Of a DNA stretch of 50,522 nucleotides, positions 25,856 through 50,522 are shown piece after piece; the stretch's first letter is position 1, and the number at the start of each line of letters is the position of its first letter. The DNA lies in NCBI GenBank assembly GCA_009103225.1, contig RHPI01003762.1:216956-267477 (forward strand), written 5' to 3'. The notes under the pieces were generated by a model that was not told the DNA's origin, did no database searches, and saw nothing but the letters and a program-made list of their open reading frames with translations. A program made the translations under genes and the position numbers. This DNA comes from Chlorokybus atmophyticus (lineage: Eukaryota; Plantae; Mesostigma and Chlorokybus algae).

Positions 25856-25877
25856 GGGTTAGGGTTAGGGTTAGGGT
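25856..25877 (+). repeat. Interstitial telomeric repeat GGG(TTAGGG)3T
   Basis: Direct read; same orientation as the terminal array. Confidence 0.9.
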
Positions 25878-26270
25878 CCTGGTGAGCCGGCACGCCCACA
25901 AAACCGTTCGACGGTGATACTCAACATCGTCGCGAAATGGCTGAGCAGGACGCGGCGCCCGAAATTGGGATCTCTAATCGCGTTTCCCACCTGACATAAT
26001 CTATATCACTAGATCGGGTCGCTTGTCAACTTGATGTCCCGACGCGGCATTGCCTTGCCGGCTTTTGCGTCCCGACGCGGACTTTCTCTCAATTTCTGAG
26101 TCCCGACCCGGGTTTCCCCCTTCTGTGTGAGCCGACTTACCAAATTCAAACCAACTCCGGCAACGGTAGCAACGCGCGGGTACACTTCCACAAAAGTGTA
26201 ACGCCTGCAACCGATCGCATCGGTTAACCCATGAAACCGCATTGGAAAGCCGATTGCGGTAGCGGCATGC

Positions 26271-27405: not shown

Positions 27406-27615
27406 NNNNNNNNNNNNNNNNNNNNNNNNNNNNNNNNNNNNNNNNNNNNNNNNNNNNNNNNNNNNNNNNNNNNNNNNNNNNNNNNNNNNNNNNNNNNNNN
27501 NNNNNNNNNNNNNNNNNNNNNNNNNNNNNNNNNNNNNNNNNNNNNNNNNNNNNNNNNNNNNNNNNNNNNNNNNNNNNNNNNNNNNNNNNNNNNNNNNNNN
27601 NNNNNNNNNNNNNNN
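27406..27615. other. Assembly gap (210 N)
   Basis: Run of N. Confidence 0.99.
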
Positions 27616-29557: not shown

Positions 29558-29769
<212 letters not shown>

Positions 29770-43889: not shown

Positions 43890-45158
43890 CTATTTGGGGC
43901 CGGAGACGCGCTGAGGGCAGTTCTTAATCAAATGCCCTTTTTCCTTACAGAGGAGGCACTTCCCCTCCTTCATAAGCGCCAATTTCTCAGCTTCCGTAAT
44001 GGTGAGGTTAACATACCCCGCTTTGTTGGCTGACTTTGCCGGAGACCCTCCCTTCTTGGGTTTCGCTTTCGCGAAAGTGGGCTTGTTTCTCACAAAATCG
44101 GCGTTGGCCTTCTTGTGATGCGGGTTAGCCTCTTCTTTACCCCGCTTGTTCAAGCCTTTGTTGCGGGCTGTCTCAAGACACCTGTCAACCAAATCATCAA
44201 ACTCATGACCCTTCCATGGGGCCAAAGTTTTTGGATTCTCGAAAACAACTGGGCAGTCTTTCATAGCTTGGGAGAGGCCGGAGGTGAAGCGATCCACCTT
44301 CTCTTTTCCATCTATGCTGCCTACACTTGAAACAATGCGAGCAACCCAGTAGCGAAACTGCTGGGCATACTCCGAAACATTGCCCTTCTCGCGCAACTTC
44401 TTCAGCTCAGCCCGGGCTTCCGCTACCGGATTGACTGAAGCATAATGGCTTCTCAGCATAGCCTCTAGCTCACTGAAATCTGCCTCTTTCCCCTCAGCCA
44501 GTGTTTCCACCTTGGCTTTCCATAGGGTCTGTGGGACATCACCTAAGAAGGTGATTGCATCTGCAACCCATGACTCCACCGGACTATGCCTGGCGGTGAA
44601 GTAAGCGACTATGGTTTGAAGCCAATTCTCGATACTCTGATCCTTGTCGCCGTTGAACTTGGGAGGGCGAATAGCCAGTTTGCCCTTCCCTCTTTCTTGA
44701 GCAAGAAGTCTGGCCTCCAGAGAAGCTATCTTGTCACTCATCTCTGTGGCCTCCTGCTCATACTTGCTGACATGTGAATCAAGTGCCTGAGCAGTGTTAA
44801 ACAACAAGTCATTGTTCTCGACCACTGTATGAACAGGTACATTAGATTTCAGAGGCCCATAGTAAAGCTCCAGCCTGGAAATGCGATGCTGATCGCGCTG
44901 AAGTCGGCGACACAGCAACTCAGCTGCCTCACCATAAGCTTGAGAACCCATTGGTTCTCTCAAGCCATCACGAACCGTTGCCCATCTGGGAGTCAGCTCA
45001 TCTGAGCTCGGTACCGAAACTGAGACTGACCGGAGTCTCTCTGGCAGCAAGTTCACCCCGGCAGTGGAATCTATGTCCATGATGGTGGCTGTATCTGGGT
45101 TGTTGGTGTTGGCCACAGCTGCTGCGTTGTTGGCATCACCCATCCTGGAAAGGAACAA
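43890..45158 (-). CDS. gag: Gag, 422 aa, intact ORF
   Basis: RPPKFNG...IENWL capsid motif, YWVARI...DRFTSGL, and zinc knuckle CLLCKEKGHLIKNC. Ends in a TAG that is in frame with pol. Confidence 0.9.
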   Translation of the reverse strand: MFLSRMGDANNAAAVANTNNPDTATIMDIDSTAGVNLLPERLRSVSVSVPSSDELTPRWATVRDGLREPMGSQAYGEAAELLCRRLQRDQHRISRLELYYGPLKSNVPVHTVVENNDLLFNTAQALDSHVSKYEQEATEMSDKIASLEARLLAQERGKGKLAIRPPKFNGDKDQSIENWLQTIVAYFTARHSPVESWVADAITFLGDVPQTLWKAKVETLAEGKEADFSELEAMLRSHYASVNPVAEARAELKKLREKGNVSEYAQQFRYWVARIVSSVGSIDGKEKVDRFTSGLSQAMKDCPVVFENPKTLAPWKGHEFDDLVDRCLETARNKGLNKRGKEEANPHHKKANADFVRNKPTFAKAKPKKGGSPAKSANKAGYVNLTITEAEKLALMKEGKCLLCKEKGHLIKNCPQRVSGPK

Positions 45159-46288: not shown

Positions 46289-48595
46289 GCATGCCTCCGA
46301 AAAAGCAGCTGCCTTCCGCGTCTGGCAGCAGCAGGAGCAGACGCGTTCCAAGGCCCCAGCGGCTCGCTCTCTTTCAAATCGCCTGCCTGCCTGCGTGCGT
46401 GCGTGCGTGCGTGTGCGCGCGTGTGTCTGTGTGTATGGGACTCGACAGAGTAGTTGTTTTTCTGATCTAAAGCTGCAAGGCTCAAAGCAATGTAGTATGA
46501 ACCAAACAAGTACTCATCACAGCTCGCAGCTGTTTGTCGAGCTTCGCGATTTGACACCACCAATTGCTGGTCTCTGTCAGGCGGACCTGCCGGCTGCGTT
46601 GGCGAACCGCAAACAGCTCTTCCGCAGCTTTGCCCAGAGTGAAGACATCGCGACTTTCACTTGATCATTGCCTAGAAATGTGGCTGAGCCAGTGCGCAGT
46701 GGCAGTGGCTCGTCAGCTGCTGTAAGAGTCGGCTGATAAGTATGGCGGATGGCCTTCGTTTGCATCTGAGTGAGAACCATCCCAGATAACGCTCAGCGAG
46801 CAAACCACCAAGCCGTCAGGTAGCAGCTGCTTTGCCAGCCGCTGTGTCGCTTGACTTGCACCCATCTTATGTGACTCACTCTCCTGCCAATTGTTACAAG
46901 GGCGTGTGAGGCATTGAAATTAGGCATGCGCATATGTCATGCATGCAACAGAAGTTGTGGTACCTCAAGACCTGGAGCACGCCTCGAAGGCAATCCAGGG
47001 ACTGGCACGCAGCTCCTTGCTTTGCTACGTCCTTCTGCAGATTGCTGCACTTGCTGTGTGAGGCTCGCTGCCTGCAGCCTGGCTAACGTTCCGGGGGAGA
47101 GTTTATGGAGAAAGAAAATGCCAGTGCGCTGTTGGAACGAGTCAATAGCCTTCTCCCAGCATCCTGCGTACGCGTCGTTGCTGAAGCAACGACGCTTTCT
47201 TGCAGTGCGCATAAACATTCTGCTAGAAGGTGCTCAAGGCAATCATCGCTTGCTCTCTCATCACCTACTACACATCCAAAAACAACGTGACTGCAGCCGA
47301 TGGACTCTGCGAGGGTTAAACAACAAGTGGAACCACACAAACAGCGACTACCGGAAGCTTGCGCAGGAAGCAGTGTCTTTGGTCGTTGGTGTGCGCACGC
47401 AAAGACACACGTACACGACAACCGTGCACATACCGACAACGCACATTCGTGCGCCTGCTAGCACATGCACGTACACTCTCGTCGCGATGTGCAGTTTTGC
47501 AAGCGTGGTGTTGGCGTATAATACCAGGGGCTGTGTTTGTGAAATGACAAGGTGGTAAAGGCGCTGGTGCTACCGAGCCAAGCACTCCAGGTACATGTGT
47601 CGCACATATACTGCACACATGCATGCACATGATGCTCGTACTGAAGTAGTGCTGACTGTCCCAAACTGCACGTATTAACTTACTGCACTTCAAGCGTGTT
47701 CACACATGTATATGCAGAGGTGCACACTCGCAGCCACTTACTGTACGCGCGTCTATGTGTATAGTATGACATGGCATGCCCTAGCAGGTTTGCTGTGTGC
47801 ATGTGTGTACATGCGCACAGTCACACATCTGCAGACGTGAACACCCGCCTGTGTGCGCGTACCTGTGGCATGAGATACCACATGTACTCTGCTGAGTGCG
47901 CGTGTGTGTGCACTTCTTTGCATGTATGCTATGTACCTCTGCCGCAACTGGATACTTCGCCCTGCCTTCATCGTGCTTACAAGTACAACTTCTCTCACCA
48001 CAGGCAGCTGCAGATGGAGTTGCTGGTACATGTCGGCAAGGGTGTTGGCGGTAGCATGACACAACGTGTGCTATACTGTGTGCTAGCTGAGGTGATAGCG
48101 GAGCCTGGTAGATGTTAGGGTACCTGCACGCGGGGCAAAAATAATGAATGCTTGCTCCCGATTCATGCACCCAACGGGAGTGATAGTGAAGTACGTAACT
48201 ACAAAGTCGTAGTGCTAGCCTACGGGTCGACGCTTTTTTTTTATACATACTATGCAGCATACAAGGGTATGCAAGGCAGGGAGCAAGGGGCTACTCCTCA
48301 TGGACGCAGAATTCTGGGCAACATCCAGCTATAAGTACTGTTAGTATACGCTATGTCGTATATAGTGTACATTGCAAACAACATGCTGCATTTTGCACAA
48401 CAGACCTGCTTTGAAAGTTACATACGCACGTCTGATTTCTATGTATATGTACATGATCTGGTCAGCAACTCGCTGATTCAACATAGATATGTCCACCCTC
48501 ACACCCTGGCGTTGCACACAGCATGTTTCGATTACAGCAGAAGAGCGAACACGCTGGCGCATCGCAGCATCAGGGAGAGGAGTTGCGGAACAGAA

Positions 48596-50426
48596 CTAAC
48601 GCCTCTGGTAGTTCAACAACTGGATGCCGAAGACCACAACCATGGCAAAGACAGCAACAAAACCGGTGAGGATCGCTGCCGTTTGGCCGAGGAAGGAGTA
48701 GCTGAACCCGAAATAAGCGTTGATGTACTTGCTGATAGGCTCTTCACCCGCGTCCGCCAGGCTGATCATGGTGTTGTCCTTCCCCAACTGGCTGCTGATC
48801 AACCCATCGAGCGTCCATGCCAGAGGATTGCAATAGGAGTACCATCGCCACCACCCAGGCATGTTATTGCGAGAGACAATAAAGCCAGCGAATAGGTTCC
48901 TGTGTTCATGCCACACAGCGATCAACAACATGTAGGACACATTGGTAAGCGAGGAGACCAAAAAGAGACCCATAGCTAACAGGTTGCACACACACCAGAA
49001 GGAGTAAAAGAAGGTAGAAAGAACGGCTGCCAGCTGCACACTAGGAGTAAGCACCGCGCAAGACATGCCATAGTATGTAAAGCAGGATAGCGTCAGAAAC
49101 ATGAAGAAGAAATACCTGCTATGTATGCAAGAGATGAAATGGTCGGCCATGAGTGTGCTTGTGAGATGATGACTTTATGCAGGAACCACACGTCTGCCAC
49201 AGACGCTTACCATAAGAAGCTGGCTGCGTCCCATTGGAAGTCGACCGTTGCATAGGTGATAACAGCGTACGTGGCAGTCTGAACCAGAATGTAGAGGATT
49301 TCAATCAGCGGTTGACCGAGAGCATAAGGCACAGCCGAGTAGTACCCCGCCGCACGCTCGCGGTAGAACACTCCTCTCTCCACTGCCACCACGGGCTGTA
49401 CCGTGGAGGCATTCTGGATTCCGAGGCAGAACACGACAAGATACACGCCACCGGCAATGTTCAACACATCCTGCTGGCTGCTTCGGTCGTTGCCCTTCCT
49501 CCAAAAGGTGGCGCCGAAAAAGAGCCCAATGAGGACCGTCATGCCCAGCCGCACAGCGTTGTACTGCGGTGAGCGCCAGTATGTGATGTGCTGCTTCCAC
49601 AAGTTCGCCAGCAGCTGTTCTGAGAACGGCCTTGCGTACTTGTTGTCGAACTTCACAAACTCCAGCCCCGGCTGTGGTTGTGACAACTCTTCAATCATAC
49701 TCTCGTTTCGCCTGTGCACGAAGCGACCCACAGTCAGTCAGTCTCCTCCGCAAGATCTTGCTGTGCGAACAGCGCCATGTTGTAACCGCGGCATGCATGA
49801 CAACAACAAAGGCAAAAAACAAAACGCGCAGCATGAAGTTCCATGTGCTACGTGCTTACTCGAGGAGATACGAATTGCGGTAGTATCTACCAAAGTCGAC
49901 ACCCGTGGACTTCTCCACGGCGGGGGTGGAGCACTCGAGCATCCAGGTGGCGGGGTTCTGACCCTCCTGAATGCGGGGCACTGCGGGAATTGCCTGAAAG
50001 AATGTGACGAGCTCGCAGGACTCGTGGCCAAGGCCACCGAAATAGATCACTTCGCCCCCGCGTTGGAGCAGCAGCAACTCATCGAACGACTCAAAGATGT
50101 CAACCGATGGCTGATGGATGGTGCACACAACTGTTCGGCCCGTATCGACCGTGTTGCGCACCGCTCTCATCACAATGGCTGCAGCGCGTGCATCAAGTCC
50201 GGAGGTTGGCTGCTCAGCACACACACAACATGCAACCTTGGTCTCACCTTGTGCATGTGCGGGTTGCACGCATGTGTACGGACTACGCAATACGCACGAG
50301 CAAAGCACTCCTGTTTCTTGTTGCGCATGTACACACTGCCAGCTGGAAAGAGAGCATACCTCGTCCATAAAGATGATGCTTGGGTTTGCAACGAGCTCGA
50401 CAGCCATGGTCAGGCGCTTGCGCTGC
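48596..50426 (-). pseudogene. 5'-truncated ABCG/PDR transporter (second half of NBD2 plus TMD2): complement(join(48596..48899,48996..49115,49211..49711,49860..50209,50360..50426))
   Basis: [22 protein letters not shown]|[58 protein letters not shown] and PGWWRWY..NPLAWTLDGLISSQLG. Four GT-AG introns keep the frame. Walker A and the whole N-terminal half are absent. Confidence 0.92.
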
Positions 50427-50441
50427 AGCCATTGTGATGAG
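50420..50441. repeat. 22-bp perfect inverted copy of 50166-50187 at the gene/telomere junction
   Basis: GCGCTGCAGCCATTGTGATGAG is the reverse complement of CTCATCACAATGGCTGCAGCGC; both flanks mismatch. Confidence 0.93.
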
Positions 50442-50522
50442 GGTTAGGGTTAGGGTTAGGGTTAGGGTTAGGGTTAGGGTTAGGGTTAGGGTTAGGGTTA
50501 GGGTTAGGGTTAGGGTTAGGGT
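50440..50522 (+). repeat. Terminal telomere array (TTAGGG)n
   Basis: Uninterrupted repeats to the end of the window; G-strand points outward. Confidence 0.97.

What the first reader, a model, noticed from the sequence alone, without database searches (positions are those of the whole stretch)
50166..50522. Chromosome end healed inside a gene: break, 22-bp fold-back template switch, then telomere addition
Seen: the PDR coding sequence runs to ...(E)QRKRL at 50426. Positions 50420-50441 are a perfect inverted copy of 50166-50187 (the AAAIVMR codons), and TTAGGG repeats begin on its final AG with no subtelomeric spacer. The first 7 nt, GCGCTGC, fit both the native EQR codons and the copied tract (microhomology, inferred from the conserved EQRKRL motif). 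Inference: the broken 3' end folded back about 230 nt, was extended 15 nt, released, and was then extended by telomerase. This would be a base-resolved record of de novo telomere healing.
Basis: partly seen in the sequence, partly recalled or inferred. Interest (0 to 1): 0.76.

Follow-up and report, generated by a model that had tools for sequence, protein, structure and literature searches.

The report
Healed chromosome break with fold-back scar
At this chromosome end a transporter gene has lost its front two thirds, and between the stump and the telomere sit 15 bases copied backwards from 232 bases further in. This looks like a broken end that briefly primed on itself before being capped, which combines two known repair steps, and no sequencing reads were available to confirm it.

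Summary
Positions 50420-50441 are a perfect reverse complement of 50166-50187 (22 nt, 232 nt apart). A perfect TTAGGG array starts on the last two bases and runs to the window end.

A minus-strand ABCG/PDR gene is cut in the signature motif of its second ATP-binding domain. Homology to full-length PDR proteins begins exactly at Q of EQRKRL (50425). The remaining C-terminal ~447 codons, in five exons with four GT-AG introns, are undamaged, so the truncation looks recent.

The 15 inserted bases have one possible template in the window. The 3' end's annealing site, GCAGCGC, occurs once in the 3.4 kb upstream, at that template.

Best reading (about 0.58):
- A break was resected.
- The 3' overhang snapped back on 6-7 nt of microhomology and was extended 15 nt.
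- The new strand was released and capped by telomere repeats.

Each step has precedent: short fold-back insertions at yeast breaks, and extra bases at healed human terminal deletions. I file it as a new member of a known kind.

It remains unverified. Other first-stage notes report telomeres capping truncated genes and transposons elsewhere in this genome (Chlorokybus, by those notes). None reports a fold-back scar of this kind.

The parts
48596..50426 (-). Remnant of a full-size ABCG/PDR transporter gene: the C-terminal part of the second nucleotide-binding domain (from the signature motif onward) plus the second membrane domain, about 447 codons in five exons, stop TAG at 48596-48598.
   Evidence: tblastn with full-length PDR proteins aligns residues 1007-1453 of P0006 to 50425-48599. 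Pfam ABC2_membrane matches at 1.8e-32 and 8.9e-10. All four introns are GT-AG and all exons are in frame.
50362..50426 (-). First surviving exon: (E)[22 protein letters not shown], i.e. signature motif to Walker B. Native sequence ends somewhere in 50419-50426.
   Evidence: Upstream of Q the frame reads SSQWL instead of the near-invariant LSxE.
50210..50361 (-). Intron 1 of the remnant (GTATGC...GAGCAG). It makes up most of the 232-nt loop of the inferred fold-back.
   Evidence: the ORF read-through.
50181..50187 (+). GCAGCGC, the site on the same strand to which the 3' end GCGCTGC can anneal.
   Evidence: It is the only occurrence in 47000-50419. It forms the inner part of the proximal arm.
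50166..50180 (+). Template of the 15-nt insertion (codons AAIVMR of the next exon).
   Evidence: It is the only reverse-complement match of the insertion in the window. Arm I1.
50420..50426 (+). Overlap (microhomology) GCGCTGC. It fits both the native R, Q and (E) codons and the copied tract.
   Evidence: Six nt are shown, because CAGCGC encodes the conserved Q and R. The seventh is inferred from GAG use, 14 of 19.
50427..50441 (+). Templated insertion AGCCATTGTGATGAG, the reverse complement of 50166-50180.
50440..50522 (+). Telomere array (TTAGGG), 13.8 perfect units to the window end. Its first AG is shared with the insertion.
   Evidence: CCCTAA/TTAGGG is the reported telomere motif of Chlorokybus atmophyticus (PMC8287931).

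Best explanation
This is a chromosome break inside, or distal to, a PDR transporter gene that was repaired in vivo in two steps.

(1) Inferred: the 5'-ended (minus) strand was resected by at least about 260 nt.

(2) Inferred from the sequence: the single-stranded 3' tail ending in GCGCTGC folded back and annealed to GCAGCGC at 50181-50187 on the same strand, making a 232-nt loop. Any 3' flap distal to it was trimmed. A DNA polymerase (Pol delta- or Pol theta-type snap-back synthesis) then copied 15 nt.

(3) Inferred: the new strand unwound, leaving a T/G-rich 3' end ...TTGTGATGAG.

(4) The repeats are seen; the enzyme is inferred. Telomerase aligned on the terminal AG and added TTAGGG repeats, stabilising the truncated chromosome.

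The gene stump is a by-product with no expected function. Shown directly: the 22-nt perfect inverted repeat, its position between the last native codon and the first telomere unit, the truncation point, and the intact state of the stump.
For: - The 22/22 inverted repeat with a 232-nt spacer abuts the telomere.
- The insertion has a single possible template in the window, with chance about 2e-6 within 1 kb.
- Only 8 comparable inverted repeats occur in 50 kb, and none of the others is at a telomere.
- The annealing heptamer is unique in the 3.4 kb upstream and sits exactly at the template.
- Homology to 6 PDR proteins starts exactly at Q of EQRKRL. The preceding residues depart from the LSxE found in about 127 of 137 homologue contexts.
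- The stump has no stop or frameshift and has four GT-AG introns, so the event is young.
- No N-terminal part of the gene is present in the window.
- The telomere motif and orientation are right for the reported species.
- Precedents: 2-150 bp fold-back insertions at yeast breaks, with a 10-bp microhomology, a 41-nt loop, Pol delta synthesis and unwinding (PMC11724301); Pol theta templated extension in cis (PMC4912351, title and abstract only); a 1-5 nt overlap with the telomere unit at 14 of 19 healed human breakpoints, and extra bases (2, 14, 20 nt) at three (PMC3136441).
Against:
- The window comes from a scaffolded assembly with N gaps, and its method is unknown to me.
The prior for GAG-CAG-CGC from codon usage alone is only about 0.23.
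- The folded overhang is not especially stable (z +1.0), and its minimum-energy fold uses a competing 7-nt pairing (50174-50180 with 50401-50407) rather than the terminal one.
- The 232-nt loop is longer than in the yeast example (41 nt).
Confidence: 0.58

Rival explanations
1. The first step is the same (fold-back priming and 15-nt synthesis), but the telomere was captured rather than synthesised. The unwound 3' end was joined by NHEJ or alt-EJ to a telomeric-repeat fragment or another chromosome's telomere, using the AG as junctional microhomology.
For: In the yeast model the fold-back product is captured by a second DNA end through NHEJ or alt-EJ with 0-5 nt of microhomology (PMC11724301). 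For cancer neotelomeres, short non-telomeric inserts (22% of sites) and 0-3 nt microhomology were taken to favour end joining or capture (PMC11293586). The 2-nt overlap seen here fits either route.
Against: Repeats are perfect and in register from the first unit, and no subtelomeric sequence of another end lies between them. An overlap of 1-5 nt with the repeat unit is also the classical telomerase signature (PMC3136441).
Confidence: 0.12
2. A long fold-back inversion formed first (hairpin-capped end, then an inverted duplication or dicentric). It broke again, or was cleaved at the palindrome centre, only 15 nt into the distal arm, and that second break was healed. The 22 nt are the last trace of a large inverted duplication.
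For: Fold-back inverted duplications with short spacers and microhomology, followed by breakage and sometimes de novo telomere addition, are established in yeast and humans (PMC10622511; PMC3907307, abstract). Palindrome centres are preferred cleavage sites (established knowledge).
Against: Only 22 nt of inverted sequence exist. A second break within 15 nt of the fold-back junction is unlikely for dicentric breakage, which in yeast occurs kilobases away near centromeres. This route also needs more steps.
Confidence: 0.08
3. The junction is not part of the main genome. It would be a chimeric or rare molecule (a library artefact, or a sub-clonal broken chromosome in the culture) that the assembler used to extend a contig end, while most cells carry the intact gene.
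For: There is no independent support. The assembly is gapped. Other first-stage notes describe many telomeres fused directly to genes or transposons in this genome, which could reflect a systematic artefact as well as biology. The gene stump is pristine, as expected if the intact gene still exists.
Against: An artefact would need two precise joins 15 nt apart: a microhomology-primed inverted copy, then telomere repeats in register. Ligation chimeras carry no templated insert, and strand-switch read artefacts give long palindromes without a spacer (reasoning). A 7-nt overlap cannot mislead a k-mer or overlap assembler. The array lies at the sequence end in the correct orientation.
Confidence: 0.17
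4. The 22 nt are native. The intact gene has an intron ending ...CTCATCACAATGGCTGCAG just before CGC AAG, and the telomere happens to start at the edge of a pre-existing inverted repeat.
For: The minus-strand tract ends in CAG, a possible splice acceptor.
Against: It needs a 15-22 nt perfect match between an intron end and a downstream exon (chance about 1e-6 to 1e-4). It also needs the break to fall exactly at that match's outer edge (about 8 such repeats per 50 kb). It would place Q of the invariant EQRKRL in another exon while the tract still encodes Q in frame.
Confidence: 0.03

Closest known systems
Chromosome healing by de novo telomere addition at terminal deletions (e.g. human 22q13 deletions, PMC3136441; neotelomeres in cancer, PMC11293586)
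   Same: Telomere repeats in the normal orientation abut unique, non-subtelomeric sequence. There is a 1-5 nt overlap with the repeat unit, and the distal sequence is lost. Some known junctions carry 2-20 extra bases, one with a 7-bp inverted palindrome. About 22% of cancer sites carry 1-10 nt inserts.
   Different: Here the extra 15 bases can be traced base for base to a template 232 nt inside the same end, with 6-7 nt of priming microhomology. The setting is the germline-equivalent genome of a streptophyte alga, not a patient or tumour.
Very short fold-back (snap-back) templated inversions at double-strand breaks in yeast (Yu et al., NAR 2024, PMC11724301); Pol theta templated extension in cis (PMC4912351); SD-MMEJ snap-back synthesis (PMC2943611)
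   Same: A resected 3' end anneals to an inverted microhomology on its own strand, a short stretch is copied (2-150 bp, mostly under 14 bp in yeast), and the nascent strand unwinds.
   Different: In those systems the unwound strand is captured by the other side of the same break. Here it ends in a telomere. The loop here is 232 nt against 41 nt, and the polymerase is unknown.
Large fold-back inverted duplications with terminal deletion (inv-dup-del; PMC3907307, PMC10622511)
   Same: Fold-back priming at a resected break with a short spacer and microhomology, a terminal deletion, and eventual acquisition of a telomere.
   Different: Those duplications span kilobases to megabases and pass through a dicentric intermediate. 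Here synthesis stopped after 15 nt, and no duplication beyond 22 nt exists.

Membership tests
De novo telomere addition (chromosome healing) | Species-type telomere repeats, G strand 5'->3' toward the end, joined directly to unique non-subtelomeric sequence | tested here: met
   TTAGGG x13.8, perfect, at the window end, starting at 50440. The motif matches that reported for Chlorokybus atmophyticus. The species identity comes from other notes of this scan and was not verified here.
De novo telomere addition (chromosome healing) | Sequence distal to the junction is lost (truncated gene) | tested here: met
   Only residues ~1007-1453 of a ~1450-aa PDR protein are encoded. No N-terminal part is found in the window. 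The rest of the genome could not be searched.
De novo telomere addition (chromosome healing) | Short (about 1-5 nt) overlap between the last non-telomeric bases and the repeat unit | tested here: met
   AG at 50440-50441 belongs both to the copied tract and to the first repeat. Compare 14 of 19 human junctions.
De novo telomere addition (chromosome healing) | Junction present in independent reads or molecules and physically terminal | not testable with these tools
Exact-ORF look-ups in other assemblies were blank.
De novo telomere addition (chromosome healing) | Repeats added by telomerase rather than captured | not testable with these tools
   The sequence alone cannot separate the two routes.
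Fold-back (snap-back) templated insertion | The inserted bases are the reverse complement of nearby sequence on the same side of the break | tested here: met
   50427-50441 is the reverse complement of 50166-50180, the only match in the window.
Fold-back (snap-back) templated insertion | Microhomology at the switch point | tested here: inconclusive
   Six nt (CAGCGC, encoding the conserved Q and R) fit both the native and the copied sequence. The seventh is inferred from GAG use. The native bases themselves could not be read from an intact copy.
Fold-back (snap-back) templated insertion | Template within the resected single-stranded tail | tested here: met
   The template lies 232-260 nt from the end. 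This is within the few hundred nucleotides of short-range resection cited in PMC11724301.
Fold-back (snap-back) templated insertion | Dependence on Pol delta or Pol theta | not testable with these tools
   This needs genetics.
Large fold-back inverted duplication (inv-dup-del / BFB product) | Inverted duplication of kilobases or more flanking a short spacer | tested here: not met
   The inverted match is 22 nt and does not extend.
Functional full-size ABCG/PDR transporter | NBD1-TMD1-NBD2-TMD2 with Walker A in both NBDs | tested here: not met
   Only the part of NBD2 from the signature motif onward, plus TMD2, is present. It is a gene fragment.

The most novel reading that the evidence does not exclude
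The scar is one visible instance of a genome-wide habit. In this asexual streptophyte alga, chromosome ends may often be made by breakage and telomerase healing, as other first-stage notes of telomeres fused to genes and transposons would suggest. Snap-back synthesis on the resected tail would then be a regular way of turning a poor 3' end into a T/G-rich telomerase substrate. If so, telomere-adjacent junctions across the assembly should often carry short inverted copies of nearby sequence.
Probability: 0.1. Interest if true: 0.7.

Novelty: new member of a known kind. Interest (0 to 1): 0.4.

Why it matters
If the junction is real, it is a clean natural record showing that two repair activities can act in series on one broken end: microhomology-primed snap-back synthesis, then telomere addition. 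That would explain the unexplained 'extra bases' seen at some healed human and tumour chromosome ends. It would also add a data point on how chromosome ends turn over in an early-diverging relative of land plants. It does not reveal a new mechanism or gene, and the truncated transporter is most likely just debris.

Tried and rejected
Tried without result:
- Independent assemblies: the look-up of encoding contigs was blank for three ORFs. These were the 183-aa sense ORF, the 184-aa last-exon ORF, and the 109-aa antisense ORF that spans both junctions.
- Intact paralogue or allele, to read the native Glu codon:
  - There is no second copy in the window.
  - The HMMER search of representatives gave no hit above about 75% identity.
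  - The word search with the 183-aa ORF gave no hit above about 77%. That search is limited to proteins of 100-320 aa, so full-length PDRs of this species were out of reach.
- Earlier notes of the scan: searches by sequence and by words found no paralogue and no similar scar.
- The paper describing this genome's assembly method was not in the library.

Considered and rejected:
- A stable hairpin as the driver. The overhang folds no better than shuffles (z +1.0).
- A native intron end (see rivals).
- A k-mer or overlap mis-join through the repeat. A 7-nt overlap is too short for that.
- The N-terminal half of the gene relocated within the window. It is absent.

Full report
**1. What is in the sequence**

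The last 357 bases of the window were read directly.
- The repeat finder reports one inverted pair in 49000-50522. Its arms are 50166-50187 (CTCATCACAATGGCTGCAGCGC) and 50420-50441, 22 nt, 100% complementary, 232 nt apart. blastn of the terminal 2 kb against the whole window finds the same pair and nothing else.
- Neither edge extends. Base 50165 would dictate A after 50441 where the sequence has G, and 50188/50419 do not pair.
- Tandem Repeats Finder gives a perfect 6-nt array at 50440-50522, 13.8 copies. It is TTAGGG on the + strand, so the G-rich strand runs 5'->3' to the end of the window.
- The array's first AG is also the last AG of the distal arm. There is no spacer.

**2. The gene**

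The coding strand is the minus strand.
- The ORF list and direct translation give exon 50426->50362 as [22 protein letters not shown].
- A GT..AG intron follows at 50361->50210.
- The next exon, 50209->49860, starts [35 protein letters not shown].
- Further exons carry Pfam ABC2_membrane (1.8e-32 and 8.9e-10).
- tblastn with six PDR proteins returned by the representative search aligns the window from 50425 down to 48599. This corresponds to residues 1007-1453 of the 1453-residue P0006.

The window therefore keeps the last ~447 codons of a ~1450-codon full-size ABCG/PDR gene, starting inside the signature motif of the second nucleotide-binding domain.
- Upstream of Q the frame reads S-S-Q-W-L, then the telomere's TAA (and reading).
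- In the homologues fetched, the four residues before QRKR are LSxE in about 127 of 137 contexts.
- All four remaining introns have GT-AG borders, and every exon is in frame to the TAG at 48596-48598.
- The stump has not decayed, which argues for a recent truncation. It is equally what one would see if the intact gene still exists in most cells.
- No other part of the gene is in the window.

**3. Is the inverted copy more than chance?**

- The 15 bases that cannot be native (50427-50441) have exactly one reverse-complement match in 50.5 kb, 232-260 nt away. About 2e-6 such matches are expected within 1 kb and about 1e-4 in the whole window.
- The window contains eight perfect inverted repeats of 14 nt or more within 1 kb, against 0.3 in Markov shuffles. 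The others lie in transposons, and none touches a telomere.
- The first six bases of the distal arm, read on the coding strand, are CAG CGC. These encode the conserved Q and R in the right frame, so native sequence and copied tract overlap by at least six bases. The seventh base needs the lost Glu codon to have been GAG, which the stump uses in 14 of 19 Glu codons.
- The heptamer GCAGCGC, to which a 3' end GCGCTGC can anneal on its own strand, occurs once in 47000-50419, at 50181-50187, exactly at the template.

**4. Mechanism**

The inserted bases equal the minus-strand sequence, so they are what a polymerase would make if the + strand 3' end primed on the + strand itself. That requires both sites to be single-stranded, meaning the 5'-ended minus strand was resected by at least about 260 nt.

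The inferred order is:
- break, at 50426 or further out, with the flap trimmed after annealing;
- resection;
- snap-back on 6-7 nt;
- 15 nt of synthesis;
- unwinding;
- telomere addition on a ...TTGTGATGAG end, with 2 nt of overlap.

None of these steps is observed directly; only the product is. Folding the 300-nt tail as DNA shows no unusual stability (z +1.0). Its minimum-energy structure uses a competing 7-nt pairing, 50174-50180 with 50401-50407. The fold-back was therefore opportunistic rather than driven by a strong hairpin.

**5. Comparison with what is known**

- Yu et al. (PMC11724301) describe 2-150 bp fold-back insertions at an HO break in yeast, most under 14 bp. They are primed by a 10-bp imperfect inverted microhomology with a 41-nt loop and made by Pol delta. 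They are then unwound and captured by the other end through NHEJ or alt-EJ.
- Pol theta 'templated extension in cis' and SD-MMEJ snap-back synthesis are related activities (PMC4912351 and PMC2943611, titles and abstracts only).
- Large fold-back inverted duplications with a terminal deletion, and sometimes de novo telomere addition, are known in yeast and humans (PMC10622511; PMC3907307).
- Healed human 22q13 deletions show 1-5 nt of overlap with GGTTAG at 14 of 19 breakpoints. Three junctions have 2, 14 and 20 unexplained extra bases, one containing a 7-bp inverted palindrome (PMC3136441).
- In cancer genomes, 22% of new telomeric sites carry 1-10 nt non-telomeric inserts (PMC11293586).

Both halves of the proposed event are thus established, and extra bases at healed ends have been seen. 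What this locus adds is a traceable template and priming site for those extra bases, in an alga.

**6. Rivals**

- (a) Same snap-back step, but the telomere was captured by end joining rather than made by telomerase. The 2-nt overlap fits both routes.
- (b) A long fold-back inversion formed, then broke again 15 nt into the arm. This is possible if the palindrome centre was cleaved, but it needs more steps, and no longer arm exists.
- (c) An artefact or a sub-clonal molecule. The assembly is gapped: N runs at 4254-4740 and 27406-27615, and single Ns at 29603 and 31370. No independent support could be obtained. Against this, two precise joins 15 nt apart, the first microhomology-primed and the second in telomere register, do not match common library or assembly artefacts.
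- (d) A native intron end. This is rejected on probability.

**7. Limits**

- Three exact-protein look-ups in other assemblies were blank.
- The representative search and the word search returned no relative closer than about 75-77%, so the intact paralogue's codons could not be read.
- The exons were searched separately.
- The identification of the genome as Chlorokybus comes from other notes of this scan and was not verified here. It agrees with the CCCTAA-type telomere reported for C. atmophyticus (PMC8287931).
- Those notes also list several other telomeres fused directly to genes or transposons in this genome. None mentions a fold-back scar of this kind, and none of them was checked here.

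**8. Verdict**

- It is a new member of a known kind (chromosome healing with a short templated insertion), not a new mechanism.
- Interest 0.4. It would rise if reads confirm the junction and if other ends of the assembly carry similar scars.

Noticed in passing
window 25857-25878: An interstitial GGGTTAGGGTTAGGGTTAGGGT (three and a half telomere units) lies about 60 nt upstream of an ATG at 25938 (MAEQDAA...). It may be a telo-box-type promoter element like the one another note of this scan describes at a TRB gene, or a relic of an older end.
   Followed up: partly
window 4254-4740, 27406-27615, 29603, 31370: N runs of 487 and 210 bases and two single Ns. The window comes from a scaffolded, gap-containing assembly, which bears on how far contig ends can be trusted.
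   Followed up: partly
window 50174-50180 and 50401-50407: A second 7-nt inverted match (ATGGCTG / CAGCCAT) lies beside the one that was used. It competes with the terminal pairing in the predicted fold of the single-stranded tail.
   Followed up: partly
window 48869-48994: Intron 4 of the PDR stump is in frame and free of stops, so the last two exons and this intron read as one 184-aa ORF (48596-49150). A prokaryote-style gene caller would mis-annotate it.
   Followed up: partly
window 43890-45158 (-): A retrotransposon gag ORF (Retrotrans_gag plus a CCHC zinc knuckle) lies 3.4 kb proximal to the PDR stump. The chromosome end is transposon-rich (see also the Gypsy and transposon notes at 20-20478).
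   Followed up: no
same genome, other pieces (notes s1-079176, s1-079221, s1-186456, s1-192605, s1-183872): Several other first-stage notes report telomere arrays fused directly to truncated genes or transposons, including a 7.5-kb segment with telomeres at both ends. Taken together they suggest either frequent breakage and healing in this alga or a systematic feature of the assembly. This is worth a genome-wide junction survey.
   Followed up: no
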